A stretch of 64,000 nucleotides of DNA, taken from positions 167,109 to 231,108 of the IMG/VR virus record IMGVR_UViG_3300029911_000001, one strand, 5' to 3'. A program made the position numbers and the translations under genes. Position 1 is the stretch's first letter, and each line of letters opens with the position of its first letter. The notes beneath the pieces are model-generated. The model did not search any database. It worked only from the letters and a program-made list of their open reading frames with translations, and was not told the DNA's origin. Shown here piece after piece: positions 20,048-56,112 of this stretch.

Positions 20048-20058
20048 AAATTGAATAC

Positions 20059-20146: not shown

Positions 20147-20202
20147 CTTTCGTGACTACCGACCTCTTTAAGTAGAGGTATCTCTTGGAGGTCGGTAGGT
20201 TC

Positions 20203-20817
20203 ATGACATTTTTCACAGTGTATCGAACACAGAATCTGGTGAACGGGAGGTACTACTTCGGCGTCCATAAGACCAAAGACCCCTACGATGGGTACCTTGG
20301 GTCGGGTAAGATTTTGAAACGCGCAATAATAAAGTACGGTGAGCCAGCGTTCATCAAGAATCTCTGCTTCATCTTTGACAATCCAGAGGAGGCTTTCGCT
20401 AAGGAGTTTGAACTAATTGAAACGTACCGGCAAGATTCGCTTTGCTACAACCTGAGACAAGGTGGAAGTGGGGGGTTTGATTGGATAAACCGGGAAGGCA
20501 AAGCAGATTATTCAAGGGCAGCGAAAATGTCTCACGGAAGTAAAAGTAAAAGAGACCCCAACCACTATATGAAGATGGTTGAAGGTAGAAGGAAAAAGGG
20601 GTACGGAGTTGCCCCCCAGTTCATAGGCATCTGGTCAGGACGTAAGCATACATCTGAAACCAAAGCCAAGATGGCGTTGGCAGCAAGCTTGAGAGTTGGT
20701 GAAAAGAACTCGCAACATGGGACTTGTTGGGTAACAGACGGTGTTACAAATATGAAGGTGAAGCAATCAGACCTGTCCACGTACCTTGTGGGTAGTTGGA
20801 AACGAGGAAGAGTATAA
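20203..20817 (+). CDS. GIY-YIG (Seg-like) homing endonuclease inside the tRNA cluster
   Basis: VYRTQNLVNGRYYFGVHKT...YLGSG...KYG, YNLRQGGSGG, KHTSETKAKM. Confidence 0.85.
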   Translation: MTFFTVYRTQNLVNGRYYFGVHKTKDPYDGYLGSGKILKRAIIKYGEPAFIKNLCFIFDNPEEAFAKEFELIETYRQDSLCYNLRQGGSGGFDWINREGKADYSRAAKMSHGSKSKRDPNHYMKMVEGRRKKGYGVAPQFIGIWSGRKHTSETKAKMALAASLRVGEKNSQHGTCWVTDGVTNMKVKQSDLSTYLVGSWKRGRV

Positions 20818-21035
20818 TGCAAGTCGTTCAAACGCTGTTGGTACAAGGGAACGCGCAACAGGTAGCTTGGCTCAACGTAGACCCGCGAGTGAAGAAGGGC
20901 TCCGTTGTTACGCTCAAGGACGAACCTGAGAGCGGTCAGTGGGAAGTAGCCGAGCAGTACATGAAGCAGGAAGCTTCGGACATCCAGCGTGGATGGGGCA
21001 ACGACCTTCCCAAGTCGCAGCGGACTGAGCGGTAA
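20817..21035 (+). CDS. Hypothetical protein
   Basis: TAATG-coupled ORF. Confidence 0.6.
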   Translation: MQVVQTLLVQGNAQQVAWLNVDPRVKKGSVVTLKDEPESGQWEVAEQYMKQEASDIQRGWGNDLPKSQRTER

Positions 21036-21071
21036 TTAGCTTTTCCTGCTGTACGGTTTTTAGCTTTTTAC

Positions 21072-21156
21072 GCCCGGATGGCGAAATTGGTAGACGCGGC
21101 AGACTTAGAATCTGTTGTCGCAAGACGTGGGGGTTCGAGTCCCCCTCCGGGCACCA
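21072..21156 (+). tRNA. tRNA-Leu(TAG)
   Basis: GCCCGGA/TCCGGGC, CT-TAG-AA loop, long variable arm, CCA. Confidence 0.95.
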
Positions 21157-21279
21157 AGTTTGAACTTACTATCGTGAGACGATTGCACGCAGAACCCCGT
21201 GTGATTGAGTGAAAGCTGTGGCAGGCGAATTGACGCTAAGGCGATAAGTAACTCAGTCGTTCAAAGTTTTACAAAGTAT

Positions 21280-21369
21280 GCGCGAGTGGTGGAATTGGAA
21301 GACACAGCAGACTCAGAATCTGCCGTCCCGAAAGGGCAACTACGAGTTCGACTCTCGTTTCGCGCACCA
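21280..21369 (+). tRNA. tRNA-Leu(CAG)
   Basis: GCGCGAG/TTCGCGC, CT-CAG-AA loop, long variable arm, CCA. Confidence 0.92.
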
Positions 21370-21382
21370 AAAGTTTAGCAAG

Positions 21383-21464
21383 GCCGATGTGGTGGAATGG
21401 CATACACAGGACACTCAAAGCGTCCCGCGAAAGCATACGAGTTCGACTCTCGTCATCGGCACCA
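21383..21464 (+). tRNA. tRNA-Leu(CAA)
   Basis: GCCGATG/CATCGGC, CT-CAA-AG loop, one anticodon-stem mismatch, CCA. Confidence 0.82.
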
Positions 21465-21476
21465 AAGTTTAGTATT

Positions 21477-21551
21477 GCTCCTATGCTGGAACTGGCATAC
21501 AGCTCTATTGTACATTGCGGGGCGGTGTGATTCGACCCCCATACGTGAGCC
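21477..21551 (+). pseudogene. Degenerate Leu-type tRNA
   Basis: Leu-like D-arm TGCTGGAACTGGCATACAG, TTCGA, partial acceptor pairing; no recognisable anticodon arm. Confidence 0.4.
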
Positions 21552-21723
21552 TTTTATCTCTCACGTCACATTTTCCCGAGAACGCAGTATGGCTTGGTAA
21601 GCTAGTTCCTAGTTGGCTCAAACAACCGGTACTAGCAAGAGACCTGTTCACATTGAAATAAATTGGCATCCGCATACACTGGCATTCGTGTTTTTGAACT
21701 TTCATACCCTAATTGAGGGTGTG

Positions 21724-22266
21724 ATGAGACAATATCGAAACAAGTACAGTAAGGAAAGTCTGGAGCCCATCGTTAGGGACAGCCTATCGGTAGCTGGGGT
21801 GATTGATAAACTCGGATTGAAACAGGCTGGGGGTAATCATAGGCACTTAAAGTTACTTTTCAAAAGGTTCGAAATTGATACTTCCCACTTTACAGGAAGT
21901 ATATGGAACCGGGGGCTCACCGCAGAGACAGACAAACGAGTAAACCGAGGGATTAGACAAAAGTACACAGACGATGAGGCTTTCTGTGAAAATTCACTTC
22001 TTGGGAGTTCTCAACTTAAGCGGAGATTACTTAGGATTGGATGGAAGTATTGTTGTTCTCGTTGTGGGATTTCAGACTGGTTAAGTGAAAAGATTGCACT
22101 ACATCTTGACCATATAAATGGTATCAATGATGACAATCGGCTTTGTAACCTTAGATTTCTTTGCCCAAATTGCCATCAACTAACAGGGACATGGGGTTCG
22201 AGAAACGCGGTCGTGGTGAAACGGCATACACACTACCTTGAGGTGGTAGCGGGGGCAACCCCATGA
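21724..22266 (+). CDS. HNH endonuclease
   Basis: CSRCG...LHLDHING...NRLCNLRFLCPNCH; stop codon lies inside tRNA-Leu(GAG). Confidence 0.88.
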   Translation: MRQYRNKYSKESLEPIVRDSLSVAGVIDKLGLKQAGGNHRHLKLLFKRFEIDTSHFTGSIWNRGLTAETDKRVNRGIRQKYTDDEAFCENSLLGSSQLKRRLLRIGWKYCCSRCGISDWLSEKIALHLDHINGINDDNRLCNLRFLCPNCHQLTGTWGSRNAVVVKRHTHYLEVVAGATP

Positions 22267-22292
22267 GAGTTCAACTCTCTCCGACCGCACCA
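22207..22292 (+). tRNA. tRNA-Leu(GAG)
   Basis: GCGGTCG/CGACCGC, TT-GAG-GT loop, long variable arm, CCA. Confidence 0.92.
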
Positions 22293-22311
22293 AAGTTAAG
22301 TATTATACAGG

Positions 22312-22638
22312 ATGAAGCTCCATTGGAGTCAAGTCCTAGTTCGAAATAGATGCAAGGCACGTGAACCAGCGGCTCGACTTCGAACAGCTATGTTGGAAGC
22401 GGGGATACCACACAAGTGTGAACGCTGTGGGTGTCCTCCTGAATGGCGAGGCAAGCTGCTCGTACTTCAGATTGACCACATAGACGGCGACACTCTCAAT
22501 AACGAGCCTGACAATGTTCGCTTCATCTGTCCGAACTGTCACTCGCAGACACTAAACTTCGGAGCCAAGAACCGCAACCGGCTCACTGAAGCAGGGTTCG
22601 ATGATTTGTATGCTTGGGGAGGTGAGGACTATGAGTAA
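22312..22638 (+). CDS. HNH endonuclease
   Basis: CERCG...LQIDHIDG...NVRFICPNCHS. Confidence 0.88.
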   Translation: MKLHWSQVLVRNRCKAREPAARLRTAMLEAGIPHKCERCGCPPEWRGKLLVLQIDHIDGDTLNNEPDNVRFICPNCHSQTLNFGAKNRNRLTEAGFDDLYAWGGEDYE

Positions 22639-22816
22639 AAGCATCGTGTGCATTCTCGGCATTAGCACCTATGGTGGATTCGAAGCAAAGGACGCTACGC
22701 TGGATAAGCAAGCGGCTCATGAATGGCTGCAAACGGAAACAGCACCGGACACCATGGCTGTCTTCAAGCGGGTTGATTGGAATCTGGTACGGTCAAGCTA
22801 GGGCAGACAAAGTAAT

Positions 22817-22903
22817 GCCGGGATGGTGGAATTGGCAGACACATCGGCCTCAAAAGCCGCCGTTCGCAAGGACATGAGGGTTCGACCCCCTCTCCCGGCA
22901 CCA
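22817..22903 (+). tRNA. tRNA-Leu(CAA), second copy
   Basis: GCCGGGA/TCCCGGC, CT-CAA-AA loop, CCA. Confidence 0.9.
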
Positions 22904-22954
22904 AACAAATATTTGCAATAAATCTGTCCGAAACCGTGTTCACTCCGGTATACT

Positions 22955-23164
22955 GTGGCTGGAGGCTTTTGGATGCCAGCGACAGACCCCACCAAACACA
23001 TCAACGTTACGTTGCCCCATGAGGGCATCGAGTTCCTGACACGGGTACAAGTTTACCTGCGGGACAGGTATGGTCGTGCGGCCAGTAAAGCAGCACGAGC
23101 CAACGTCTCCATCGCTTTGAACTCCATCCGCAAGGAACTTGAAACAAAGGAGCCACAGGCATGA
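22955..23164 (+). CDS. Hypothetical protein
   Basis: 69 aa ORF downstream of TATACT. Confidence 0.5.
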   Translation: MAGGFWMPATDPTKHINVTLPHEGIEFLTRVQVYLRDRYGRAASKAARANVSIALNSIRKELETKEPQA

Positions 23165-23414
23165 GAGTATCCGTCTATCCCATTCTAATCGAAGAAGGCA
23201 AGCCACCCGCGTTCAAAGAAATCAAGCTGCCCAAAGGGTCTCGCATCCTCGGTGGGGTTCAAGCGTAAGGAAGGTCTCGGCTACTACTGGTCTCGGAACC
23301 GTTGGTGGCGGTTCGGTGTTGACGACTACCCCCCAGCCTACCGGGTGTTGTGCTCGAACTGCAACATGAGCGCGTATCGAGGCAATGGTGTGTGTATTCA
23401 CCAGCGAGGCAAGA

Positions 23415-23912
23415 ATGAACCTACCAACTGAAATTCGTAGCTTCTCTGATGACTGGAGCTTCCTGTCTAACTTCTACCCGTGCAAGGTGGTGTTGGATGG
23501 TGTGGAGTATAGTTCGGTGGAGCACGCATATCAGGCGGCGAAGACGCTGAACCTCAAGGAGCGGGAGAAGTTCCTGTACGCTGGCGTCACAGCCGGTCGT
23601 GCGAAGCGGATGGGCGATGCCATCAACAAGTCTGGCAAGCGTCGTGCGGACTGGCTGGAGGTCAACAAGCCTATCATGCTCGACCTGCTCAAGCAGAAAT
23701 TCTATCCGTCGATTTTACGTCGGAAGCTGCTCTGTACGTTCTCTGCGATTCTGATTGAGGGGAACTACTGGCACGACACGTGGTGGGGCGTGTGTGAAGG
23801 CACGTGCAAGGAGCACGGTCCCCATGAACCATATGGGGATAATATCCTAGGTCTGCAACTGATGGAGGTTAGGGCCTACTATGGAACAGGTGAAGGGTGT
23901 CTCAACCGTTAG
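23415..23912 (+). CDS. NADAR (YbiA-like) family protein
   Basis: FLSNFYPC, YSSVEHAYQAAK, LKQKF, LIEGNYWHDTWWG, NILGLQLMEVR. Confidence 0.92.
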   Translation: MNLPTEIRSFSDDWSFLSNFYPCKVVLDGVEYSSVEHAYQAAKTLNLKEREKFLYAGVTAGRAKRMGDAINKSGKRRADWLEVNKPIMLDLLKQKFYPSILRRKLLCTFSAILIEGNYWHDTWWGVCEGTCKEHGPHEPYGDNILGLQLMEVRAYYGTGEGCLNR

Positions 23913-24127
23913 GCTGCTACGCTCCTCCGCGACCTGCGAGGCACAGCGACTGGAGTTCCAGTTCCAAGGGCATTGATTGCGGCTTCCAGTCGGTCTATCT
24001 CAACCGCCAGTTCGTTTCGCAGCGTCTTGATGCCTCTGTCTTTCATGCCGGATAAAGCCTCGTGAGAAACGCGGAGGCGAACGATTTCAGCCGTAAGGTT
24101 GTCACGCAGGGTATTGATGTCCATCAC
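23909..24127 (-). CDS. Small basic protein, paralogue of 24243-24536
   Basis: DINTLRDNLTAEIVRL helix, Arg-rich tail. Confidence 0.65.
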   Translation of the reverse strand: MMDINTLRDNLTAEIVRLRVSHEALSGMKDRGIKTLRNELAVEIDRLEAAINALGTGTPVAVPRRSRRSVAA

Positions 24128-24242
24128 TACTCCTTTTACAATATCCAGTATACCTAACCATAGGTCAATGTAAAGTAAAATTTACCCCCATGAGAAAACG
24201 GGATGGAGCCGGATTCTCATGGGGGTTGGATCGTTCGTTGGT

Positions 24243-24536
24243 CTACGCCGCTTTAGACTGGGCTGCATTAACTTCCACAGTGGCGACAGCGGCCTTCTGC
24301 TTAGCCCAACGGGCCTTCTGCGAAGCAGAGATGCGTGCCCGAAGCTCGGGAGTCATCTCCCGACGGACACGGTGGATACCCTTCTTCTCACCCTTAGCAA
24401 TCATCGTCCGGGTCGTCTTGCGGTGCTTCACAGGGGCATGGTTGGGGACTTCGCTGGAGTTGGCGAGGGCATCGTAAGCAGCCTGAAGCCTTGCGATGTC
24501 GGTTGCGATTTCTGCACGTAACGATTCGATATTCAT
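24243..24536 (-). CDS. Putative nucleoid-associated small basic protein
   Basis: MNIESLRAEIATDIARLQAAYDAL...REMTPELRARISASQKARWAKQK; SD AGGAG. Confidence 0.7.
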   Translation of the reverse strand: MNIESLRAEIATDIARLQAAYDALANSSEVPNHAPVKHRKTTRTMIAKGEKKGIHRVRREMTPELRARISASQKARWAKQKAAVATVEVNAAQSKAA

Positions 24537-24680
24537 TGAGGTTTCTCCTGTTTTTCTATACGTTCTCCCTTTTGCGTATGGGTCTGTAACCGAGGGCTGT
24601 GGTGTGTTCAACCACACTCCCAGTGACTGTGTAGATACTTGGTGTACCACTAAGGTTGCCCCCTCCCGTTGTTTTTTGAA

Positions 24681-24716
24681 AAATAGTGTTGCATTTTTCG
24701 GACTATCGGGTATTAT
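24681..24716 (+). promoter_or_regulatory. Sigma70-like promoter of the Pro tRNA block
   Basis: AAATAGTG-TTGCAT-N16-TATTAT; ATG 6 nt downstream (leaderless). Confidence 0.75.
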
Positions 24717-24722
24717 GTAGAT

Positions 24723-24788
24723 ATGAAGTTCACGAGTCCAAACCCGTCGTTCCCACCGTGCCCTACCCTGCACGGGCCTGACCTCTAG
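24723..24788 (+). CDS. Putative Pro-rich leader peptide (21 aa)
   Basis: MKFTSPNPSFPPCPTLHGPDL; 6 Pro codons (CCA, CCG, CCA, CCG, CCT, CCT). Confidence 0.65.
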   Translation: MKFTSPNPSFPPCPTLHGPDL

Positions 24789-24941
24789 CGAGTTCAGCGT
24801 CCCGTGCGGCCTCGCCGGGATGTGAATGTGATTTTGATTTGGAGTCTAGCAAGTTCCCCGATAACACGCCCGAACCGTTCTCGCGAAAAGCGTACGGTTC
24901 GGCTCTCCTTCAAAAGACCATCCCGGTCACTATTGCTTTCT

Positions 24942-25018
24942 CGGAGAGTGGCCAAGATGGAAAGGCTCTGGTTTCGGGAACCAGAAATTCGTGAGTTCGA
25001 ACCTCACCTCTCCGACCA
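24942..25018 (+). tRNA. tRNA-Pro(CGG)
   Basis: CGGAGAG/CTCTCCG, CTGGT-TT-CGG-GA-ACCAG, CCA. Confidence 0.93.
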
Positions 25019-25030
25019 AACTTTTACCCT

Positions 25031-25654
25031 TCAAAGGAGGATCACTCCTTTATCCAACTCATCATGGTGGTTCTTACACAAGGCGATGAGGTTGCAAGGG
25101 TCATTGATTTCACCGACCAACGCAGTTGAAGGGAAAGCTCTGATGGGTTTGATGTGGCAACAGTCCACATGGAAGGTATACCCACATACTTGACACATAC
25201 GGGCTCTAACCTTGAAGAGAACCCCTCTAGCGTGTTCTCGGATTCGTTCTAATGGGCACGCCTTCTTGGTTCTTAGCGGGAGCAATGACATTGGGATGTA
25301 ATTACACTCGGGGCATCGAGTGGTAGAACGGTGTCTGTTTACCTTGAAGAAGAGGGTTCCACAAGAAGTACAGTTACGGGGTTTTGGTTTGTTTCGCGGG
25401 AATGTCGTTCGTGCCATATTGTACTTGGCACCACACGATTGGTTGCAGAACTTTTTTCTCTTGACTTGTTGAAACTTTGAGCGAGTCATCTCTTCAAGAG
25501 GTATCAAGATAGCAGTATCACACTGTAGGCAACGGGTTGGATTTTCATTGTACCCTTCCATTCGTTGCTGGGCTCTTTGTCGGTTCAACACGTTTGCATT
25601 TTTACCGGCAGCTTTGATTTGAGCCAATCTGGTTGAGCTTAGTTTGTTTTTCAT
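25031..25654 (-). CDS. HNH endonuclease between the two tRNA-Pro genes
   Basis: CQVCG...DCCHIKP...NLIALCKNHH; N-terminal Cys clusters. Confidence 0.85.
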   Translation of the reverse strand: MKNKLSSTRLAQIKAAGKNANVLNRQRAQQRMEGYNENPTRCLQCDTAILIPLEEMTRSKFQQVKRKKFCNQSCGAKYNMARTTFPRNKPKPRNCTSCGTLFFKVNRHRSTTRCPECNYIPMSLLPLRTKKACPLERIREHARGVLFKVRARMCQVCGYTFHVDCCHIKPIRAFPSTALVGEINDPCNLIALCKNHHDELDKGVILL

Positions 25655-25693
25655 TTTTCAACTCCCTGTTTACTGATTAGGTAGTTGAAAAAT

Positions 25694-25767
25694 CGGGGTG
25701 TAGCTGGAAGGTCAAGCCCGTGTTTTGGGAACACGAGACGAGGTTTCGATTACCTCCACCCCGACCA
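25694..25767 (+). tRNA. tRNA-Pro(TGG)
   Basis: CGGGGTG/CACCCCG, CGTGT-TT-TGG-GA-ACACG, CCA. Confidence 0.9.
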
Positions 25768-25780
25768 ATTTTGAACTATA

Positions 25781-25824
25781 TCACCGGAAGCAGCGGAGAG
25801 ATTCGAATCCTATCACCCCGACCA
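25781..25824 (+). pseudogene. Orphan tRNA 3' fragment
   Basis: ATTCGAATCC...CACCCCGACCA duplicates the 3' end of tRNA-Pro(TGG). Confidence 0.65.
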
Positions 25825-25836
25825 AGTTTGAAGTAT

Positions 25837-26000
25837 GCCAGCGACGACCGCTGAGCCTTTATAGCCCCTATCCGAGGGGTGTTGGGCTCATGTCACGCCG
25901 ATACCGTGCTCATCATGAGAGGGATACTCTATGAGTGTTGCGACGAACGGTGCCGACGACGCAAGTCCGGGGCAACTTCGGCCCCGCTAAGGGGCCGGAC
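25837..26000 (+). ncRNA. Candidate structured ncRNA
   Basis: Several GC-rich helices: CTCAT/ATGAG with AGAG/CTCT, GTCCGG/CCGGAC, GGCCCC-GCTAA-GGGGCC. Confidence 0.45.
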
Positions 26001-26125
26001 AAGTTTTGAACTTTGGTAGTATTATATTTAGTGGAGCCGGACTGCGGTAGTCCCACAGGACTGTACGACGTGAAGCCCTCCACACATCACACGGTCGTCG
26101 TCCGGGGTGTTAGGGGAGAAGTATC

Positions 26126-26593
26126 ATGAATTTTAAGGTGACTCATTGGCATCTCGCTAAGGGACGCGGCGATGGCGATAACACCGAAGTCGTAGTCCGT
26201 CTGGAAGAGTCATCGTGGTTCTGGCACTTCGCTGAGTTCATCGGTGAGCACGTATTCTTCACCATCTGCGATTGGTGCCACAAGGTTCCCCTCCCTAAGT
26301 TCGTATGCAACTGGGAACGCAACTGGGGCGGTGACAAGGAAGACGGCGTACATAAGCTGGAAGACTGGTATGGTGCCGACCTTGGTTGTCTCTGGCACGT
26401 CTACGTAGAGTCCCCCGTCCTTCAGTGGGTGTGGAAGCATAAGTTCATTGAACAGGCCACAGAGTTCCGTATGACCCTTGCCGAGGCCCGTGAAAAGTTC
26501 AAAGGCACACAGGCTTACAAGCTGGAGTGGATTGAAGAAGATGTCAAGCGTGACGCTGCATACGCTGCGGAACACCCCGAAGATAACGATTAG
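26126..26593 (+). CDS. Trp-rich hypothetical protein
   Basis: 155 aa, SD GGGGAG. Confidence 0.7.
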   Translation: MNFKVTHWHLAKGRGDGDNTEVVVRLEESSWFWHFAEFIGEHVFFTICDWCHKVPLPKFVCNWERNWGGDKEDGVHKLEDWYGADLGCLWHVYVESPVLQWVWKHKFIEQATEFRMTLAEAREKFKGTQAYKLEWIEEDVKRDAAYAAEHPEDND

Positions 26594-26608
26594 TCAGAAA
26601 TAATGCAA

Positions 26609-26645
26609 AAATAAGTGTTGCAAAGTTTTCTGACTTTGGTATTAT
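26609..26645 (+). promoter_or_regulatory. Sigma70-like promoter directly upstream of tRNA-Met
   Basis: AAATAAGTG-TTGCAA-N16-TATTAT. Confidence 0.75.
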
Positions 26646-26649
26646 TAGT

Positions 26650-26730
<81 letters not shown>

Positions 26731-26750
26731 AGAAGTAAAGTAAGGGTACA

Positions 26751-26849
26751 ATGGCAACTCAGGTTCTTCGCTTCAAGTGCGGCTTCTGCGATAAGGAAAT
26801 GCGTTCCCAAGGGCAACGCACCAAGCACGCAAAGGTCTGCACCAAATGA
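26751..26849 (+). CDS. 32-aa C2HC zinc-finger microprotein
   Basis: MATQVLRFKCGFCDKEMRSQGQRTKHAKVCTK = C-x2-C-x12-H-x3-C. Confidence 0.65.
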   Translation: MATQVLRFKCGFCDKEMRSQGQRTKHAKVCTK

Positions 26850-27012
26850 CCGTGGTAAATTGAAACTACTCTTCCGGGAGTAGGGTGGCTCAAATCCGCC
26901 CCATGGTCTATAACGCTGCACTAACAGAAGGACGACCCGATAGACTCACTGTTTTATAAGGAGTGTTCATGGGAAACATCGCTATGTCCTCACTCTTGCC
27001 CACTCGGGCAAC

Positions 27013-27047
27013 CTGAGTGAGTCCCTGAGTGAGTCCCTGAGTGAGTC
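27013..27047 (+). repeat. 12-bp tandem repeat x3
   Basis: CTGAGTGAGTCC x3, last copy imperfect. Confidence 0.92.
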
Positions 27048-27086
27048 TAAAGGGTCGCCGGTCTACCCGAATAATGACGGCTAAAA

Positions 27087-27248
27087 ATGAAACCACAAGT
27101 AAAGCTTACACGTCGTGAACGCCGGAAGTTGAACAAGCCGAAGAACAATGGCTGCAAGTATGTTTGCTTGACTTGCAACACACCATTCACCTTGAGCACT
27201 GCAATGGATGAGAAGCACTACTGCTCATCTAAGTGCCAACCGAAGTAA
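27087..27248 (+). CDS. 53-aa Cys-rich microprotein
   Basis: Basic N-terminus, CLTC...YCSSKC. Confidence 0.6.
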   Translation: MKPQVKLTRRERRKLNKPKNNGCKYVCLTCNTPFTLSTAMDEKHYCSSKCQPK

Positions 27249-27369
27249 GTTCCCGTTGAATCGGGCTTGGTACTGAAAACCAGCGAAGCAGGGTTGGTCT
27301 CTATGGGTGCAGTCTAGCGCATAGAGTTGGGAGAGGTCGTCGCGACGGCCAATCCCACCCCAGAGTTTT

Positions 27370-27426
27370 GGCGGGATAGAGGAGTTGGTTCCTTGACGGG
27401 CTCATAACCCGTAGACGGTCGGTTCG
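27370..27426 (+). pseudogene. 5' 57 nt of a tRNA-Met(CAT) ending at the T-loop
   Basis: GGCGGGA, D-arm, ACGGG-CT-CAT-AA-CCCGT, GTCGGTTCG; no matching 3' strand found nearby. Confidence 0.72.
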
Positions 27427-27842
27427 GAGGACATTCGGGAGGCTACTAGTGGCTCCCACCCGGAGGTCTTGTTGGCGAGAAGCCTCCCCCTCCGGTTTAT
27501 TTTGAGTGGTGCCGTTGGTCGCCTAGCGTCCGACATCCATGGGACAACATGGTATCGAGTCGCCGATGCGATTCGAGGCAACCTGTAGATGACGAAGAAG
27601 GTTATCCTGTGGTGTAGCCGGTAGGCGTTACAGGCAAGTCCCTTCGTCGGTATCATCCGGCACAATTTTTGTTGGGGTCTCACTACGAAGAGCGGCGGCG
27701 TAAGAGGGTGTGAGGCGAGAACCGAAGCATCGACCGTGCAGCGTACCGGATGAAACAGCCGGACTATAGTGGTGGCTTACAACAGTAATGTTGTCGGTGC
27801 GAGTGCTCATCCAAAGCCATGGAACCCCAAACAAAATAATTA

Positions 27843-27870
27843 TTGCAACTGTCTCAGAGTCGTGTATACT
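27843..27870 (+). promoter_or_regulatory. Sigma70-like promoter
   Basis: TTGCAA-N16-TATACT. Confidence 0.65.
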
Positions 27871-28056
27871 ACGTGTACGTTCTTGGATGTAAACCAAGGG
27901 AGTGGGCTCAGTTTCTTGCATCTGTAAATGCAAGTGGAGGTCGGGGCGGGTTGCCCGGTCAAGTTTCCAGCTTTAGAAGAAAGCTGGTGGTGGAGGGTGT
28001 CACGGGAAACCGTGACGCCCCCGTAGTTCAAATCTATCTTAGGAGAACAACGTCCA

Positions 28057-28254
28057 ATGGCAACAATCCTCGAATTCAACGGCTGTCCCAAATGGCGTGT
28101 AGTGAAAGAAGGGGAAGCAACCTTCCTGCACTGCCCGACGACCCAGACTCGCATCCCTGTCACTCTTGGCGAACTCCCCGAAGGTGCAAGCTTCGAGGAA
28201 GGTGATGAAAACCTCCCGACCGGTACCGAACTCGAAATCGCAGTCACGGTCTAA
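28057..28254 (+). CDS. Hypothetical protein
   Basis: 65 aa, SD AGGAG, biased codon usage. Confidence 0.7.
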   Translation: MATILEFNGCPKWRVVKEGEATFLHCPTTQTRIPVTLGELPEGASFEEGDENLPTGTELEIAVTV

Positions 28255-28261
28255 CCGAGAA

Positions 28262-28391
28262 ACGCTTGTAGCTCAGAATTACTCTGCGAGGCGGACGAGG
28301 AAGGTACCGACGACTTCGGCTAGACAGAGGAAGCCTAGAGCACCGGGGTTCTAATCCCGGAGGTCGCAGGAGAGGCCCTGCCAAGCGTACC
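28262..28391 (+). ncRNA. tRNA-like RNA with a ~60-nt insertion in the D-loop
   Basis: ACGCTTG/CAAGCGT acceptor, GCTC/GAGC D-stem, CCGGG/CCCGG anticodon stem, GCAGG/CCTGC T-stem. Confidence 0.65.
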
Positions 28392-28397
28392 TTTTAT

Positions 28398-28509
28398 GAG
28401 GGAATGGATAGACTCTGACTTCTCATCTGACATAAGACCAGTCAGGCAGCGTAACTCAGATGAGGCATCGGCCAGAGGAACGTCCGTGAAATCCCGCACT
28501 CCCTCTCCA
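28398..28509 (+). ncRNA. CCA-terminated tRNA-like RNA of unknown class
   Basis: GAGGGA/TCCCTC-T-CCA ends; internal CTCATCTGA/TCAGATGAG helix. Confidence 0.5.
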
Positions 28510-28563
28510 ATTTGTTTGCAACTTTTTCCAACTATCTGCGTCTAAGTAAGAGAACACATCCCC

Positions 28564-28614
28564 ATGAACCCCATCTACCCAACTCCCGGCGCACGATTTA
28601 CTGAGACCCTCTAA
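28564..28614 (+). CDS. Putative leader peptide (16 aa) upstream of tRNA-Phe
   Basis: MNPIYPTPGARFTETL; stop codon in the loop of ACCCTC-TAAGC-GAGGGT. Confidence 0.4.
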   Translation: MNPIYPTPGARFTETL

Positions 28615-28637
28615 GCGAGGGTGTTTCGTATTTCTGC

Positions 28638-28713
28638 GGCCTTGTAGCTCAGATGGTAGAGCACTACGCTGAAGACGTAGGTGCCGCGGTCTCGAAAGCC
28701 GCCAAGGCCACCA
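28638..28713 (+). tRNA. tRNA-Phe(GAA)
   Basis: GGCCTTG/CAAGGCC, CTACG-CT-GAA-GA-CGTAG, CCA; atypical T-loop. Confidence 0.88.
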
Positions 28714-46851: not shown

Positions 46852-47139
46852 ATGGCAAAGACCGAGGCAGCATCGCCCGACCTCATCGCAATAGAACCCT
46901 ATGACGGGGAGACCCAACTTCTGGTTGTTCAGGTCTACCTTGACAATGGGGTAGTCTATGAGTACGATGTCAAGGGTGCCCACAAGGCTCGTGAGCACGC
47001 ATGTGCTATCATTGTAGGCGGCTATCGCCACAACGATGGTGCTGGAGAGTTCGAACACTACCCGCCTCATCGTGTGGCAAAGGTAAAAGTTGTTGGAGTC
47101 ATCCCCACCAAGTACCCAGACCGGGTGTCAGGAACATAA
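46852..47139 (+). CDS. Hypothetical protein
   Basis: 95 aa ORF. Confidence 0.65.
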   Translation: MAKTEAASPDLIAIEPYDGETQLLVVQVYLDNGVVYEYDVKGAHKAREHACAIIVGGYRHNDGAGEFEHYPPHRVAKVKVVGVIPTKYPDRVSGT

Positions 47140-48371
47140 TGCCAAACGCTGACTGCTGCGACATCTGCGGCGAGACATATCACAGAAGCGAGAACTGTGG
47201 TCGCATTGTTCCTCGCGACCGAGTGTTCGGTTCTGTATTCGGCCAAGCTATCGGCGATGCCATCGGACATCCTATCGAGTTCATCGAAGCTGGCACCGAT
47301 GCCAAGCAAGTTTCCGGCCTACTCGATGACAACAGGTTCACCGACGACACCCAGATGTTCTGTGCCATCGGCGAAGCTATGTTGGACTCCCCGCCTCACA
47401 AGGGTGAAGAGGAGTTCATGGTTGCCCTCGGAAAGCGGTTCGTTGACTGGCGTCACAACCCCCTTGGCGGCTCACACCGGGCTCCGGGCGGTAACTGCAT
47501 GGAAGCTGTCCGTAAGCTGGGCACCGGCATGTCATGGCGTGAGACAGGCGGTAAGGATTTCAAGGGCAACGGCACTGCTATGCGTTCGGGTGTTGTTGGA
47601 TGCGTGTACTGGAGAACCCCGGAGCTTGCCTTCCGCATCGGCTGTCTGACCAGCGTCTGCACTCACAACAACCTTGAAGCTATTCTTGCTGCTGGTACAG
47701 TGGCCTACCTCGTGGCTGCTCAAATCGGAGGGACCAGCTTTGCGGAGGCCGTGGCAAACGCTCTCCTACTGTGTGCTGACTTCGACAACCCGATGCGGGT
47801 TCCCAGTTATCCACAGGATGTCAAGATTGGGTCGGGTTACCACAACCAGAACCCATGGTACACTGTGGCACGTTTTGGAGCCGCCTATGCACTGGGCACT
47901 GATAACGCACCCATTCACGCCGCTATCGCCGCTCTCGAAGACCCCACCAGCATTGTCAAGGATGGTGCTGCCGTACCTGCCGTCGCAGAAGCTATCTTCT
48001 TCAACGCCCGGTTCGAGAGGTACCGTGACATTGTGATTGAAGCTGCCAATAACAGCGACGACACCGACACCATCGCTGCCATCTCAGGGACTATTGCCGG
48101 GGCACGAGTAGGCTTCAAAAACATCAACAAGCATTGGACAAAGAAGATTGAGTTGGCGGAGTACCTGACTGACCTCGCTACCCGTCTGTGGGAGTTGTCG
48201 GAAGTCTACGGTCGGGAGGTTCCTGTGCTTGTCCCCCACAATGCAGTGAACATGGCGAACACCGAAGATGTTGACACCCTGCTCGACACCGATGACGCTG
48301 AAATTGAAGGTGAAGAATTGCACACCATCCTCAGTAGTGAGGATGAGGAAGAATACGAGGTAGAGTTCTAA
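47139..48371 (+). CDS. ADP-ribosylglycohydrolase (DraG/ARH family)
   Basis: AIGDAIG, FTDDTQM, GNGTAMR, NSDDTDTIAAISGTIAGA. Confidence 0.92.
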   Translation: MPNADCCDICGETYHRSENCGRIVPRDRVFGSVFGQAIGDAIGHPIEFIEAGTDAKQVSGLLDDNRFTDDTQMFCAIGEAMLDSPPHKGEEEFMVALGKRFVDWRHNPLGGSHRAPGGNCMEAVRKLGTGMSWRETGGKDFKGNGTAMRSGVVGCVYWRTPELAFRIGCLTSVCTHNNLEAILAAGTVAYLVAAQIGGTSFAEAVANALLLCADFDNPMRVPSYPQDVKIGSGYHNQNPWYTVARFGAAYALGTDNAPIHAAIAALEDPTSIVKDGAAVPAVAEAIFFNARFERYRDIVIEAANNSDDTDTIAAISGTIAGARVGFKNINKHWTKKIELAEYLTDLATRLWELSEVYGREVPVLVPHNAVNMANTEDVDTLLDTDDAEIEGEELHTILSSEDEEEYEVEF

Positions 48372-52607: not shown

Positions 52608-53753
52608 TTGAACTTCATCTCTCAGCGACCAAACCATTGGAATGAAATCGTAGGTCAAGAACGAGTTACTAAGCTTCTTGGTTGCATTCTCAAGACTGAG
52701 CGGTTCATGCCACGGGGATACCTGTTTCAAGGTCCCGTCGGCGTAGGTAAAACCACGCTGGCATATCTTACCGCAAGGTCTTTGATGTGTACCGGCGACG
52801 ACCCCATGGGTTGCGGCAAGTGCTCCTCGTGCAAATTCATTGACAGTGCCGAAGACATTGAACGAGGATTGAACCTCTCCTCTGATTTTACGGAAGTGGA
52901 CGCAGCGTCCAACTCTGGGGTGGAGCACGCTCGTAGCCTGATGGACATCATGGACTCACCCCCCTCTGGCATCGCACGCCGTCGGATACTTCTAGTGGAT
53001 GAGGCTCACCAACTATCCAAGGAGGCGTGGGACACTTACTTGAAACCTCTGGAGGCTAAGGACACTACCAGTATTTTTATCTTCCTGTCCAACCAGCCTG
53101 AGAGCATTCCGGGGTCAATCTCCAGTCGTTTGACTCCTATGTTCTTTGAACGAGTCCACGTTGACCAAATATTTGGACTCATCGCCAATCTGGCGAACGC
53201 TAACAACATCCCCTACGAGCATGACGCTCTCCGCTACATCGCCCAACGGTCGAAGGGTATTGTCCGTGATGCTGTGAAGTGGCTCGGCATGGTCGCTTCG
53301 ATGGGCACGCTCACCAAGGAACTGGTGAAGGACGCTCTGCATGACGTGCTGGAAGACTACTGCCTGAAGTGTTACACGTCTCTCATTCTGGGCAACCAAA
53401 TAGAAGCGGTTCGATGGATAGATGAAGCTGGCCGTAACTATAGTACAAGTAAAGTAATCGAAGTGCTGTTCTCCATCTACGCCCGTACCCCATGGGCGGA
53501 GCCGGGAAGTCTGTACTCCCAAATAGCCCACAGGCTTCCCAACGTTGGTGAGGTAGACTCCATCTTCATCAAGTGGTTGAACAACACGAACCTGCCTTCA
53601 GACACCCTGCCGCTGGTGGTTTATGAACTCATCAACACACTGGACGTGCCAACTACGGCTAAGTCACGGGCTAAAGGGGGAACTATAGGTAGCCAGCCCA
53701 TCAAGGGGGGCATCATCCCGGAAGAAGATTTTGATAAGTATGTTAATGGTTAG
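52608..53753 (+). CDS. dnaX: DNA pol III gamma/tau-like clamp loader subunit
   Basis: RP..W.EIVGQ, GPVGVGKTT, CGKCSSC, EVDAASNSGV, DEAHQLS...LKPLE, SISSR. Confidence 0.9.
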   Translation: MNFISQRPNHWNEIVGQERVTKLLGCILKTERFMPRGYLFQGPVGVGKTTLAYLTARSLMCTGDDPMGCGKCSSCKFIDSAEDIERGLNLSSDFTEVDAASNSGVEHARSLMDIMDSPPSGIARRRILLVDEAHQLSKEAWDTYLKPLEAKDTTSIFIFLSNQPESIPGSISSRLTPMFFERVHVDQIFGLIANLANANNIPYEHDALRYIAQRSKGIVRDAVKWLGMVASMGTLTKELVKDALHDVLEDYCLKCYTSLILGNQIEAVRWIDEAGRNYSTSKVIEVLFSIYARTPWAEPGSLYSQIAHRLPNVGEVDSIFIKWLNNTNLPSDTLPLVVYELINTLDVPTTAKSRAKGGTIGSQPIKGGIIPEEDFDKYVNG

Positions 53754-54062: not shown

Positions 54063-54086
54063 CCTATTGCGTAGAAAGAAGGCAGC

Positions 54087-55301
54087 GTGATACTGGAATA
54101 TGGAAACTGTGCCCTTTTGCAGGGGTTGGATTGGTATCTCGTTGAACTCCGCTCGGAAAAGACGATTGAGCCCACCATGCGTCGTGTTGGTAAGGCTATC
54201 CCTAACATCTTTCGGGTAGACCCGGTAGAAATTTTCATACCTGTGTTCAAGCGCGACCTCGACCTCTTCGAAATGAAGACGGGTTGCTACGTGTTCGTCC
54301 GCAGCACAAACTTCCCTGCCTTGCTTCGTCTGAAGACCATCACAGGGGTGGTATCCCTCGTCACGGAAGGGGACTCGAATCGTCCATCCAAGGTCATCAA
54401 GGTTGAGGACAGTTACGTGCAGACTATTATTGCAGACGCGGAGGAAGAATTTCGCAACCGTGGCATCGGCATTGAAGTGGACTCATTCGTACGTGTGCTT
54501 AACGGTGACACTCGGGACTACTGCGGTACAGTCGAAGCTATCGGCGACGGTAAAGCCATTGTCCGTATCAACCTGAAGACCAAGAGCATTTTGCTAGAAA
54601 CTCCCCTGCGCAATCTCCTCAACCTCTCACAAGTTCCCGCCAATCAGCGAGTGTACTATTTCTGCCCATTGGTGGAGGAGTTGGTGATTGACCAAGGACA
54701 GGCCGGACTTGATTTGATAGAGGGGGACCTGAAGCTAGGGGAGGCAGTCGCTGCGGTAAATCAGGATGATGCCCGTGAACCCAAGCCTCACTCCCGGCAG
54801 AAGACAGTTACGGCGTTGGTCAAGCGGCTCATTCTTATTGAGAACCAGCATGAGCCTATGACCATCTGCAAAAAAATTGTGGAGGCTCTGAAGACGGGGG
54901 ACATCAAGGTTCCCAAAAACTACTTCATTATCTACGGTATCGTAAAGGATCGTTTGATGCGGGATTACTTCCAAATTACTGACCCTACCATTTCCAACTA
55001 TAAGGAAGTCATAAATAAGTACGGGAAGGACTATAAGTTCTCGGCAGAGATGATTTCTAAGTTAGACCCTAGTTTGAAACTCCCAGTATTAAGTAGTGAG
55101 GAACCCGCCCTCCCTCTCAAGAAGGGGCAGATTGCCCCTAAGCGTCGTGGTCGTCCTCGTAAAAGCCCTGAAGTCACCAAAGTCGTCAAAAAGAAGAGAG
55201 TGCTCTCTGACAAGAATAAAAAGAAGATGATTGAGGGGCTTAAGAAATGGCACGCCTCTCGCAATGGTTTGAAGGGCGCTAAGAAGAAAGAGAAGGTTTG
55301 A
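54087..55301 (+). CDS. NusG/RfaH-family transcription factor with long C-terminal extension
   Basis: WYLVEL...IFIP...GCYVFVR...ITGVVSLV (NGN); VRVLNGDTRDYCGTVEAI (KOW); KRRGRPRK. Confidence 0.78.
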   Translation: MILEYGNCALLQGLDWYLVELRSEKTIEPTMRRVGKAIPNIFRVDPVEIFIPVFKRDLDLFEMKTGCYVFVRSTNFPALLRLKTITGVVSLVTEGDSNRPSKVIKVEDSYVQTIIADAEEEFRNRGIGIEVDSFVRVLNGDTRDYCGTVEAIGDGKAIVRINLKTKSILLETPLRNLLNLSQVPANQRVYYFCPLVEELVIDQGQAGLDLIEGDLKLGEAVAAVNQDDAREPKPHSRQKTVTALVKRLILIENQHEPMTICKKIVEALKTGDIKVPKNYFIIYGIVKDRLMRDYFQITDPTISNYKEVINKYGKDYKFSAEMISKLDPSLKLPVLSSEEPALPLKKGQIAPKRRGRPRKSPEVTKVVKKKRVLSDKNKKKMIEGLKKWHASRNGLKGAKKKEKV

Positions 55302-55302
55302 T

Positions 55303-56112
55303 ATGTCGGTCAGCGCGATATCCAGTTACGTCAAGACGCATGAACGTCTTCTGATTGTAATCATCATTGTCGCTCTGCTCGGGTGGGGCACCAACAAGGG
55401 GTTGAACATATATGGTGGCTCTGAGCAGAGCAAGGTGACTTCCCTTCAGACTCAGCTTGACGGGACAAAACAGCAGGCCGCAGCGGCACAACAGTCAGCG
55501 ACGGATGCCAAGACGGCGGCTCAGGTTACCGCTGCTCAGGCAAATCAGGATAAGGTGGCATCCGTCGCTGTTATCACCGCACTGTCACAGCAGAACGCTA
55601 GTCTCTCGAACCAGATAATTCAGCGGGGACAGCAAACTCAGAAACAGCAGACCACCGACCTAAACGCCACCATCCCAGAGCTTAGTACCCGGTTCAAGTC
55701 TCTTGTACCTAATGTTATTCCTACGGATGTTGTAGTCGCGGCAGACGGCAAGACAGTCAATATCGGGCAGGATACCGCAGAAAAGTCAATAGCCCAACTT
55801 GAACTTGTACCTTCGCTTCAGGCGGACAACAGTGCCCTCACGACGCAAGTCAAAAACGGTCAGACGGAATTAGATTCGTTGCAGAAGACGCTGGATAGTC
55901 AGAGCAGCCTCACTGACGCTCAGGCAAAGGTCATAGCCGCACAGGATTCGTACGCTACCCTGCTGGCAACGGAACAAAAACAGTCAGACGCTGTATGGCA
56001 GGGTAAGTTGGATGTTGAAAAGACCAACACGAAGAAGGCTTATCTCAAGGGCTTCAAGTGGGGAGCTATCACAGGTTTCATCGGCGGTCTTTTCGCGGGA
56101 CACGCATTATAA
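55303..56112 (+). CDS. Membrane-anchored coiled-coil protein (spanin-like)
   Basis: N-terminal TM, long Gln/Ala coiled coil, C-terminal hydrophobic GAITGFIGGLF. Confidence 0.5.
   Translation: MSVSAISSYVKTHERLLIVIIIVALLGWGTNKGLNIYGGSEQSKVTSLQTQLDGTKQQAAAAQQSATDAKTAAQVTAAQANQDKVASVAVITALSQQNASLSNQIIQRGQQTQKQQTTDLNATIPELSTRFKSLVPNVIPTDVVVAADGKTVNIGQDTAEKSIAQLELVPSLQADNSALTTQVKNGQTELDSLQKTLDSQSSLTDAQAKVIAAQDSYATLLATEQKQSDAVWQGKLDVEKTNTKKAYLKGFKWGAITGFIGGLFAGHAL

What the first reader, a model, noticed from the sequence alone, without database searches (positions are those of the whole stretch)
54087..55301. Phage-encoded NusG paralogue with a ~230-aa C-terminal extension and AT-hook-like tail
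Seen: NGN-like and KOW-like domains, then a helical region and a basic tail containing KRRGRPRK. Established: specialised NusG paralogues (RfaH, LoaP, UpxY) are processive antiterminators, and NusG couples transcription to translation. Inference: it may override host or phage terminators, possibly including the attenuators above, or tether RNA polymerase to DNA.
Basis: partly seen in the sequence, partly recalled or inferred. Interest (0 to 1): 0.6.

Follow-up and report, generated by a model that had tools for sequence, protein, structure and literature searches.

The report
Huge-phage NusG-like factor with orphan domain

Summary
The ORF at 54087-55301 (+, 404 aa, GTG start with a Shine-Dalgarno) is real and phage-borne. 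Fold searches are decisive. Residues 13-120 superpose on the E. coli NusG NGN domain (Z 9.0, 2.3 A, 95 of 98 residues). Residues 128-182 form a KOW barrel. The top ~30 Foldseek hits are all NusG, Spt5 or RfaH. Curated sequence models miss the protein, but a broad family profile reaches NusG/Spt5 significantly. Residues ~186-335 form a confident helical domain with no match in PDB, BFVD or the ESM Atlas. An exhaustive profile search of 1.84 billion proteins finds this domain in only 64, nearly always starting at residue ~185-190 after the same N-terminal module. The AT-hook-like motif (residues 351-359) exists but is subgroup-specific and lies in the least conserved part. Other members carry Cys-rich, double-HTH, short basic or acidic tails. 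The complete genome of the cultured relative Tunturi_5 has no RNA polymerase genes but does have a sigma factor, so host core RNAP is the likely target. Antitermination itself, and any link to the 19930 hairpin, remain inference. Verdict: a new variant of a known kind, of moderate interest.

The parts
54071..54089 (+). Ribosome-binding site (AAGAAGG) and GTG start codon
   Evidence: Sequence read. The start position agrees with homologues.
54087..55301 (+). Whole gene: NusG-like protein, 404 aa plus stop codon
54123..54446 (+). NGN domain (residues 13-120), preceded by a family-specific N-terminal strand (residues 1-12)
   Evidence: VIA: E. coli NusG NGN 6vz7_AB, Z 9.0, rmsd 2.3 A, 95 of 98 residues aligned; also T. 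thermophilus NGN, RfaH NGN and Spt5 NGN. Collinear alignment with E. coli NusG, with the beta-1 Trp invariant.
54468..54632 (+). KOW domain (residues 128-182), the most conserved segment of the family
   Evidence: VIA rmsd 1.0-2.1 A to KOW domains of NusG, Spt5 and NdhS. Profile hits to the NusG/Spt5/L24 KOW. hhalign against E. coli NusG: 80.5% probability. Conservation 0.65.
54633..54785 (+). Two bridging helices (about 194-215), then a variable, acidic, low-confidence linker (about 218-233)
   Evidence: Model (pLDDT below 50 at residues 219-231). Conservation 0.31. Charge.
54786..55091 (+). Orphan helical domain (residues about 234-335), opening with the nearly invariant R-H-S-R-Q-x-T-V-T-A-L-V-K motif (residues 235-247)
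   Evidence: pLDDT 92-98. No match in PDB, BFVD or the Atlas. Only 64 carriers among 1.84 billion proteins, always following the NGN-KOW module.
55092..55298 (+). Basic tail (residues 336-404, net charge +19): disordered segment plus a terminal amphipathic helix (375-403)
   Evidence: Least conserved part of the protein (0.19).
55137..55163 (+). AT-hook-like motif P-K-R-R-G-R-P-R-K (residues 351-359)
   Evidence: Position. Conserved in 10 of 47 close relatives. Pfam AT_hook scores 15.0 and 14.1 bits in two sister proteins against a cut-off of 17.4; the query itself is not reported.
52608..53753 (+). Clamp-loader gene (DNA_pol3_delta2), a conserved upstream neighbour
   Evidence: The same neighbourhood occurs in Tunturi_5, L012, L003, L004 and L014.
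55303..56112 (+). Downstream gene starting 2 nt after the stop codon: a membrane-anchored coiled-coil protein (269 aa), conserved in the same position in a 463-kb relative
   Evidence: (29% identity, E 4e-18 to L004:7355-8098)

Best explanation
The gene encodes a deeply diverged, phage-specific member of the NusG/Spt5 family. Shown: an NGN domain and a KOW barrel in the canonical order. These are followed by a family-specific helical domain that occurs only in this fusion, and by a fast-evolving C-terminal tail, which in this phage is strongly basic and carries an AT-hook-like motif. Inferred: like every characterised NGN, the N-terminal domain binds the clamp helices of the RNAP largest subunit and the gate loop of the second largest subunit. 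Here that means the host's core RNA polymerase, because the complete genome of the cultured relative encodes a sigma factor but no polymerase subunits. By taking the single NusG site on the elongation complex, the phage protein would exclude host NusG. It would then make transcription of the long co-directional phage gene arrays processive and resistant to pausing and termination, as the specialised paralogues RfaH, LoaP and UpxY do. The highly conserved KOW and the orphan helical domain would hold a conserved partner that is not yet known. The interchangeable tail (AT-hook-like, Cys-rich, double HTH or short basic) would contribute nucleic-acid contacts that help load or retain the factor on phage DNA. 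The tail is an accessory, not the core of the mechanism.
For: Fold. Foldseek's ~31 hits at E<=1e-3 are all NusG, Spt5 or RfaH and span about 175 columns. The NGN gives Z 9.0 at 2.3 A, and the KOW 1.0-2.1 A. The model has mean pLDDT 85.

Sequence. A broad N-terminal profile hits only NusG, Spt5 and L24 in the PDB: Spt5 7e-6, Aquifex NusG 8.5e-4, and Thermotoga NusG aligned across both domains. hhalign against E. coli NusG gives 80.5% probability, E 1.3e-5. NCBIfam nusG and UpxY give collinear sub-threshold hits in the query and in 8 of 10 divergent members. PHROG 6386 'transcription antiterminator' scores E 0.032.

Constant architecture. The helical domain is found in only 64 of 1.84e9 proteins and starts at about residue 185-190 in nearly all full-length ones. 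The shorter hits examined are truncated copies; the one whose DNA was read (P0134, L003) is split by a frameshift.

Host RNAP as target. No beta, beta-prime or T7-type RNAP genes were found in this record or in the complete Tunturi_5 genome. Tunturi_5 does encode a sigma-70-family protein above the Pfam cut-off. NGN domains universally bind the beta-prime clamp helices and the beta gate loop, and RfaH and sigma share that site (PMC7819879).

Tails are nucleic-acid-binding types. An RGRP motif occurs in 10 of 47, a tail with 5-7 Cys in about 21 of 47, and all 47 tails of the close-relative alignment (A1) are 25-42% K+R. P0175 has GerE and HTH_38 domains above the Pfam cut-offs.

Gene arrays. 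Long same-strand arrays of up to 37 genes are present.
Against: No direct evidence of RNAP binding: the single docking job gave no answer. No curated NusG, KOW or UpxY model reaches its threshold for any member tested. No recruitment element or promoter motif could be found. Terminator-like hairpins are not over-represented. The record searched for RNAP genes is only about half of the genome, since the same phage was assembled as a 431,749-bp contig that could not be searched, and very divergent phage RNAPs can escape Pfam. The KOW loop that reads I-F-G-R in E. coli NusG is different here, so the KOW's partner cannot be inferred from NusG. The Tunturi_5 homologue has a short acidic tail, so DNA anchoring cannot be essential to the family.
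Confidence: 0.6

Rival explanations
1. Host-takeover inhibitor. The NGN occupies the NusG site on host RNAP mainly to disable host functions (Rho stimulation, transcription-translation coupling), shutting down or deregulating host genes rather than promoting phage transcription.
For: It shares the structural basis of the main explanation. The KOW loop differs from E. coli NusG's I-F-G-R, so host partner contacts may be lost, which would make it a dominant-negative NusG. The gene lies in a replication-type module, which would fit early or middle expression.
Against: The KOW is the most conserved segment, and an additional conserved domain is always present. This points to gained partner binding rather than mere loss of function. 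The DNA-binding tails suggest targeting to particular DNA. No experiment bears on this either way.
Confidence: 0.13
2. DNA-bound initiation-stage regulator. The DNA-binding tail and the helical domain place the protein at specific phage promoters, where the NGN contacts the clamp-helix site that sigma also uses. It would then act as an activator, a sigma antagonist or a sigma-to-elongation hand-over factor, not as a travelling antiterminator.
For: The tails are double-stranded-DNA-binding types (AT-hook-like, two HTH domains). Sigma and RfaH share one binding site (cited in PMC7819879). The lineage encodes its own sigma factor. Myxococcus CarD is a precedent for an RNAP-binding module joined to AT-hooks (PMC4374960, PMC2919716).
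Against: The tail is the least conserved part and is acidic in Tunturi_5. No repeated DNA site was found. All characterised NusG-family proteins act in elongation.
Confidence: 0.12
3. Replication-transcription coupler. The orphan helical domain binds the clamp loader, the sliding clamp or another replisome part, linking late transcription to replicating DNA, in analogy to T4 gp45/gp33/gp55 (from my own knowledge).
For: A clamp-loader gene lies immediately or closely upstream in all six contexts examined, including a member that matches the family's helical-domain profile only weakly (E 2.2e-5).
Against: Conserved gene order within one viral lineage may simply be inherited. No DnaN-type clamp was detected in either phage genome. 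No clamp-binding motif was identified. No interaction test was run.
Confidence: 0.07
4. Not a transcription factor. The NGN/KOW scaffold has been reused for RNA or ribosome binding (KOW domains also occur in ribosomal proteins L24/L26 and in NdhS), for example as a translation or RNA-processing factor.
For: KOW-only matches include ribosomal proteins and NdhS at similar Z scores. Sequence similarity to NusG is very low.
Against: Both domains, in the NusG order and at the NusG length, match NusG, Spt5 and RfaH as whole chains. The NGN is known only from the NusG/Spt5 family. The profile aligns Thermotoga NusG across both domains.
Confidence: 0.05

Closest known systems
Housekeeping bacterial NusG (e.g. 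E. coli NusG, Aquifex and Thermotoga NusG)
   Same: An NGN alpha/beta domain followed by a KOW barrel in the same order, with about the same total length of ~180 aa. Collinear sequence motifs: the beta-1 Trp, the Y-V-x-V strand, the R-P linker, G-x-V-R-V-x-x-G-x-x-x-x-[FY]-x-G-x-V-E, and the T-P turn.
   Different: Only about 23% identity. It falls below all curated thresholds. It lacks the long NGN beta-hairpin insertion of E. coli NusG and has a different KOW loop where NusG has I-F-G-R. It has an extra N-terminal strand and about 220 extra C-terminal residues. It is encoded by a phage rather than in the secE-nusG-rplK operon.
Specialised NusG paralogues (RfaH, UpxY, LoaP, ActX and the plasmid protein PrfaH)
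   Same: An additional NusG-family protein carried by horizontally moving DNA and associated with long operons. UpxY is the best-scoring curated model for several divergent members (E down to 1.4e-6). [quoted passage not shown]
   Different: All of those have only two domains. None has this helical domain or a DNA-binding tail. The model shows no RfaH-type alpha-helical KOW state. No ops-like or leader-RNA element was found. The gene does not sit at the head of a polysaccharide or antibiotic operon.
Thermotoga maritima NusG with its extra domain DII
   Same: A precedent for a bacterial NusG that acquired an extra domain, thought to aid recruitment to and stabilisation on the elongation complex (PMC7819879).
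   Different: DII is inserted inside the NGN and is not helical. Here the extra domain is C-terminal, helical and unrelated.
Myxococcus xanthus CarD
   Same: The same architectural logic: an RNAP-binding module joined to an HMGA-type AT-hook DNA-binding region (PMC4374960, PMC2919716).
   Different: CarD uses a CarD_TRCF (Tudor-like) domain that binds RNAP beta and acts at initiation. It has several AT-hooks after an acidic region. There is no homology to the protein studied here.
Tunturiibacter phage Tunturi_5 gp25 (XOB77468.1), annotated 'transcription antiterminator'
   Same: An orthologue: 46% identity over residues 1-339, with the same NGN-KOW-helical architecture, the same GTG start and the same position after the clamp loader.
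   Different: 344 aa with a short acidic end. It has no basic tail and no AT-hook. The annotation is automatic and is not discussed in the paper.

Membership tests
NusG/Spt5 family | N-terminal NGN alpha/beta fold | tested here: met
   Residues 13-120 against the E. coli NusG NGN (6vz7_AB): Z 9.0, rmsd 2.3 A, 95 of 98 residues. Also matches the T. thermophilus NGN, RfaH NGN and archaeal and eukaryotic Spt5 NGN.
NusG/Spt5 family | C-terminal KOW beta-barrel carrying the KOW sequence motif | tested here: met
   Residues 128-182 against KOW domains: rmsd 1.0-2.1 A. The profile hits Spt5 and NusG KOW domains at 7e-6 to 8.5e-4. The motif is aligned.
NusG/Spt5 family | NGN then KOW in one chain, matched as a whole by full-length family members | tested here: met
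   Foldseek's top ~31 hits at E<=1e-3 are all NusG, Spt5 or RfaH chains aligned over about 175 columns. The profile aligns Thermotoga NusG at positions 14-164 against chain residues 5-158.
NusG/Spt5 family | Passing the curated sequence models (Pfam PF02357 NusG, Pfam KOW models, TIGR00922) | tested here: not met
   Query: TIGR00922 scores 20.4 bits against a 135.7 cut-off, and KOW2_Spt5 13.5 against 28.9. PF02357 is not found in the record. None of 47 members passes. Profile-profile comparison does support homology (80.5% probability).
NusG/Spt5 family | Binding to the RNAP clamp helices and gate loop | tested here: inconclusive
   One docking job (NGN 1-125 with RPOC_SOLUE 200-400) returned 'no answer'. 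This needs biochemistry.
RfaH subfamily | Autoinhibited state with an alpha-helical KOW hairpin packed on the NGN | tested here: not met
   The AF2 model gives a five-stranded beta KOW at pLDDT about 89-95. This is a prediction only; fold switching cannot be excluded without experiment.
RfaH subfamily | Recruitment by an ops-like DNA element upstream of target operons | tested here: inconclusive
   No repeated intergenic element was found in the 231-kb record. The search was crude and covered only about half of the genome.
UpxY family (NF033644) | Passing the curated model, and location as the first gene of a capsular polysaccharide operon | tested here: not met
   Query scores 16.3 bits and the best divergent member 28.4 bits, against a cut-off of 100. 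The gene lies in a phage replication-type module.
AT-hook (Pfam PF02178) | R-G-R-P core flanked by basic residues | tested here: met
   P-K-R-R-G-R-P-R-K at residues 351-359, conserved in 10 of 47 relatives while the flanks vary.
AT-hook (Pfam PF02178) | Passing the curated Pfam model | tested here: not met
   Sister proteins score 15.0 and 14.1 bits against a cut-off of 17.4. The query's tail is not reported.
AT-hook (Pfam PF02178) | Binding to the minor groove of A/T-rich DNA | not testable with these tools
   Needs EMSA or footprinting.
BrxA / TCAD7 (as candidates for the helical domain) | Significant sequence or fold similarity | tested here: not met
   Only weak single-sequence hits: BrxA in 8 of 47 members (best E 0.004) and TCAD7 in 6 of 47 (best E 9e-4). 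The family profile finds no BrxA chain in the PDB, and no fold match was found.

The most novel reading that the evidence does not exclude
This family may be a new class of NusG paralogue. In it the universal NGN-KOW module is permanently joined to an orphan helical domain and to interchangeable double-stranded-DNA-binding tails (AT-hook-like, Zn-type Cys cluster, double HTH). Loading onto RNA polymerase would then be directed by duplex-DNA recognition, or by a phage partner bound to the helical domain, rather than by a non-template-strand ops element or a leader RNA. Together with the lineage's own sigma factor, the phage would control both occupants of the clamp-helix site of host core RNAP, from initiation through elongation.
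Probability: 0.2. Interest if true: 0.75.

Novelty: new variant of a known kind. Interest (0 to 1): 0.55.

Why it matters
NusG/Spt5 is the only transcription factor conserved in all domains of life, and its specialised paralogues control horizontally acquired operons. Those paralogues have been characterised mainly on chromosomes and plasmids. The papers I searched include a 2021 NusG review, the 2020 RfaH evolution study and a 2021 jumbo-phage comparative survey. None describes a phage NusG paralogue with an added domain. If this family works as inferred, huge soil phages that lack their own RNA polymerase would take over host core RNAP at both initiation (phage sigma) and elongation (phage NusG-like factor). 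The orphan domain would mark an unknown partner or loading mechanism. A cultured system exists for testing: Tunturi_5 and its Tunturiibacter host. The result also shows that curated sequence models miss this whole family, and that it can be annotated only through structure.

Tried and rejected
1. Docking of the NGN (residues 1-125) with acidobacterial beta-prime residues 200-400 (RPOC_SOLUE). The verdict was 'no answer' (score 0.19 against a mark of 0.34, controls not folded). It counts neither for nor against binding. Two other Swiss-Prot ids were not held.
2. Search for a recruitment or promoter element. I tried direct repeats in the window, k-mer enrichment in 130 upstream regions of the 231-kb record, and a -35/-10-like pattern built from the two weakly enriched words (4 hits against about 2 expected). 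Nothing usable came out.
3. A link to the '19931 terminator'. The hairpin exists (19930-19953, 10-bp stem plus a T-run), but it sits 8 nt before the first tRNA-Tyr of a tRNA cluster. Nothing connects it to this gene.
4. The helical domain as a known fold. PDB by VIA (best Z 4.9), PDB by Foldseek (E>1), BFVD (E>0.8), ESM Atlas by shape (TM<0.5) and by features, and the PDB by profile all gave nothing. The weak BrxA and TCAD7 hits are not confirmed.
5. NGN-KOW-only versions of the family. The short hits examined are truncated or fragmentary copies. P0134, the one whose DNA was read, is split by a frameshift in L003.
6. A T4-like link to the sliding clamp. No DnaN-type clamp was detected in either phage genome. 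This remains only a low-probability rival.
7. RNAP searches on the 431,749-bp contig of the same phage: the record is not held.
Full report
THE OBSERVATION. An AAGAAGG Shine-Dalgarno lies 6 nt upstream. Homologues, including the cultured relative's gene, begin at the same residue. The window is the last 64 kb of a 231,108-bp IMG/VR virus record. The neighbours are a clamp loader, a primase-like protein, a large DNA polymerase and a portal protein, and there is an 11-tRNA cluster. The same phage was also assembled as a 431,749-bp contig in a JGI metagenome, so this is a huge phage. Among 50,697 deposited phage records, the only relative is the 309-kb jumbo myovirus Tunturiibacter phage Tunturi_5, which infects an acidobacterium from tundra soil. 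Its gp25 is 46% identical, follows the clamp loader too, and is labelled 'transcription antiterminator'. The paper on that phage does not discuss the gene, so the label is automatic.

IS IT A NusG? Curated sequence models do not say so:
- Pfam gives only KOW2_Spt5 at E 0.068.
- PHROGs gives 'transcription antiterminator' at E 0.032.
- NCBIfam nusG scores 20.4 bits against a cut-off of 135.7.
- None of 47 relatives passes any Pfam model.

The fold is unambiguous. An AlphaFold2 model built on 47 homologues has mean pLDDT 85. Foldseek's ~31 hits at E<=1e-3 are all NusG, Spt5 or RfaH chains, aligned over about 175 columns, which is the whole NGN-plus-KOW length. An independent aligner places residues 13-120 on the E. 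coli NusG NGN (Z 9.0, rmsd 2.3 A, 95 of 98 residues) and residues 128-182 on KOW domains at 1.0-2.1 A.

After I added divergent family members found by the exhaustive search, sequence evidence also became significant. The N-terminal profile hits only NusG, Spt5 and L24 chains in the PDB (Spt5 7e-6, Aquifex NusG 8.5e-4), and it aligns Thermotoga NusG over both domains. hhalign against E. coli NusG gives 80.5% probability. A direct alignment is collinear at 23% identity. The beta-1 Trp, the Y-V-x-V strand, the R-P linker, the KOW motif and the T-P turn are all shared. Eight of ten divergent members give collinear sub-threshold hits to the UpxY or nusG models, down to E 1.4e-6.

THE EXTENSION. 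Residues about 186-335 fold confidently, with pLDDT mostly 92-98 when folded alone. They form two bridging helices, a variable acidic linker, and a compact helical domain that opens with a nearly invariant R-H-S-R-Q-x-T-V-T-A-L-V-K motif. I found no relative of this domain:
- Best VIA Z is 4.9, below the tool's stated noise level for helical folds.
- Foldseek against the PDB gives E>1.
- BFVD gives E>0.8.
- The ESM Atlas gives TM<0.5 by shape and nothing by features.
- The family profile against PDB sequences gives nothing.
- Weak BrxA and TCAD7 hits in a few members were not confirmed by the profile or by the fold.

The 'orphan' claim rests on absence, so I spent the single exhaustive search on it. 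A profile of the domain was run against 1.84 billion representative proteins and found 64 carriers. In nearly every full-length one the domain starts at residue about 185-190, directly after an N-terminal module of the same size. The short proteins found with the N-terminal half are not NGN-KOW-only versions but truncated or fragmentary copies. In locus L003, the one case read at the DNA level, a 1-base frame change splits the gene, and the next ORF is the helical domain at 44% identity. The three-part architecture is thus a fixed property of the family.

THE TAIL. It lies in a 69-residue tail with net charge +19, which ends in a predicted helix. It fits the AT-hook pattern. Two sister proteins score 15.0 and 14.1 bits on Pfam's 13-residue AT_hook model, whose cut-off is 17.4, while the query itself is not reported. 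'AT-hook-like' is therefore the right wording.

The tail is the least conserved part of the protein. Mean column conservation is 0.19, against 0.65 for the KOW, 0.57 for the NGN and 0.45 for the helical domain. The tails across the family are:
- RGRP motif: 10 of 47 close relatives.
- Tail with 5-7 Cys, including C-x-x-C and C-x-C: about 21 of 47.
- Short basic tails: the remaining close relatives.
- Two HTH domains above Pfam's cut-offs (GerE and HTH_38): the divergent member P0175.
- Tails of 138-269 aa of unknown nature: several divergent members.
- A short acidic end: Tunturi_5 gp25.

The general theme is an exchangeable module, usually of a nucleic-acid-binding type. It is an accessory, not the core of the function.

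WHICH POLYMERASE? No beta, beta-prime or single-subunit RNAP family was found in this record or in the complete Tunturi_5 genome. Tunturi_5 does encode a sigma-70-family protein (Sigma70_r2, 46.1 bits). The lineage therefore most likely redirects host core RNAP. The NusG review states that all NGN domains contact the clamp helices and the gate loop, and it cites work showing that RfaH and sigma use the same site (PMC7819879). There are caveats. This record is only about half of the genome, the 432-kb contig is not held, and very divergent phage polymerases can escape Pfam.

MECHANISM. What is shown: a NusG-family NGN-KOW module, a fixed fusion to an orphan domain, variable tails, a conserved position near the clamp loader, and no phage RNAP in the complete relative. 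What is inferred: the NGN binds host RNAP in place of host NusG. This would render transcription of the long co-directional phage gene arrays (up to 37 genes) processive and resistant to termination, as specialised paralogues do. The very conserved KOW and the helical domain would hold an unknown partner, and the tail would help loading or retention on DNA. I give this 0.6.

The rivals are:
- A dominant-negative inhibitor of host NusG function (0.13).
- A promoter-bound regulator or sigma hand-over factor, for which CarD is an architectural precedent (PMC4374960) (0.12).
- A replication-transcription coupler, suggested by the clamp-loader neighbourhood seen in all six contexts examined, although no clamp gene was detected (0.07).
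- A role outside transcription (0.05).

The single complex prediction gave no answer and is not evidence either way. I found no recruitment element. Nothing ties the protein to the 19930-19953 hairpin, which stands just before a tRNA cluster.

COMPARISON AND NOVELTY. By fold and by profile the protein belongs to the NusG/Spt5 family, although it fails every curated sequence threshold. It is not an RfaH: the model predicts a beta KOW, and no ops-like element was found. It is not a UpxY either: it scores far below the cut-off and sits in the wrong genomic context. Phage- and plasmid-borne NusG paralogues are known at the annotation level. Examples are PHROG 6386, the JGI 'NusG' names, and the rfaH-like genes on prophages mentioned in PMC7593976. 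Thermotoga NusG shows that extra domains can be added. What is new is the combination found here: a permanent C-terminal orphan domain with interchangeable DNA-binding tails, in a family that on the longest contigs comes from very large phage genomes of up to 463 kb. I found no description of it in the searched literature. I rate it a new variant of a known kind, with interest 0.55.

LIMITS. All function is inferred. 

Noticed in passing
window 19930-28713: A cluster of 11 tRNA genes: Tyr x2, Leu x5, Pro x2, Met and Phe. The strong hairpin plus T-run at 19930-19953 ends 8 nt before the first tRNA-Tyr. It may terminate the upstream operon, or it may be a processing or insulating element for the tRNA array.
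   Followed up: partly
window 27907-28002: An Rfam wcaG RNA motif hit on the + strand, exactly at the gathering score (42.2 against 42 bits, E 1.7e-4), lying inside the tRNA region. It is marginal.
   Followed up: no
window 15723-15808: A perfect 43-nt tandem duplication (two identical copies head to tail). Close by, at window 15485-15607, there is a sub-threshold Sigma70_r4/HTH hit (17.9 bits against 24.1) in a 110-aa frame.
   Followed up: no
L014 (JGI 3300029953, Ga0311343_10000004, 431,749 bp): The same phage, with an identical NusG-like protein and identical neighbours, is assembled as a 432-kb contig and recurs in several JGI samples. The 231-kb record, rated 74% complete, is therefore only about half of the genome.
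   Followed up: partly
P0152 (755 aa family member), residues about 293-755: The helical-domain match is split in two, and the inserted sequence gives weak Intein_splicing and LAGLIDADG hits (E 0.0025 and 0.008). This may be an intein inside the orphan domain, which would suggest a functionally critical site.
   Followed up: no
L018 (Tunturi_5, PP885688.1 152341-152520, - strand): Tunturi_5 encodes a sigma-70-family protein (Sigma70_r2, 46.1 bits, 315-aa frame). No RNAP subunit families were detected in its complete genome.
   Followed up: partly
window 55303-56112: The gene that starts 2 nt after the NusG-like stop codon encodes a 269-aa protein with hydrophobic N- and C-terminal segments and a Q/A-rich coiled coil. 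It is conserved in the same position in a 463-kb relative (29% identity, E 4e-18). It has a weak resemblance to Rz-like spanins (E 0.36).
   Followed up: partly
window 47001-48371: A 456-aa protein matching phage ADP-ribosylglycohydrolase families (phrog_6572, E 1.9e-27). It may reverse ADP-ribosylation, for example as a counter-defence or in host takeover.
   Followed up: no
L011 (Logan SRR28060902 contig, 4,376 bp): The family member with the double-HTH tail (P0175) lies next to a tyrosine integrase on a short contig, so the family may also occur in temperate or smaller elements.
   Followed up: no
L012:4290-5429: In the most divergent context examined, the gene after the NusG-like gene encodes an actin-like protein (Pfam Volactin/FtsA).
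   Followed up: no
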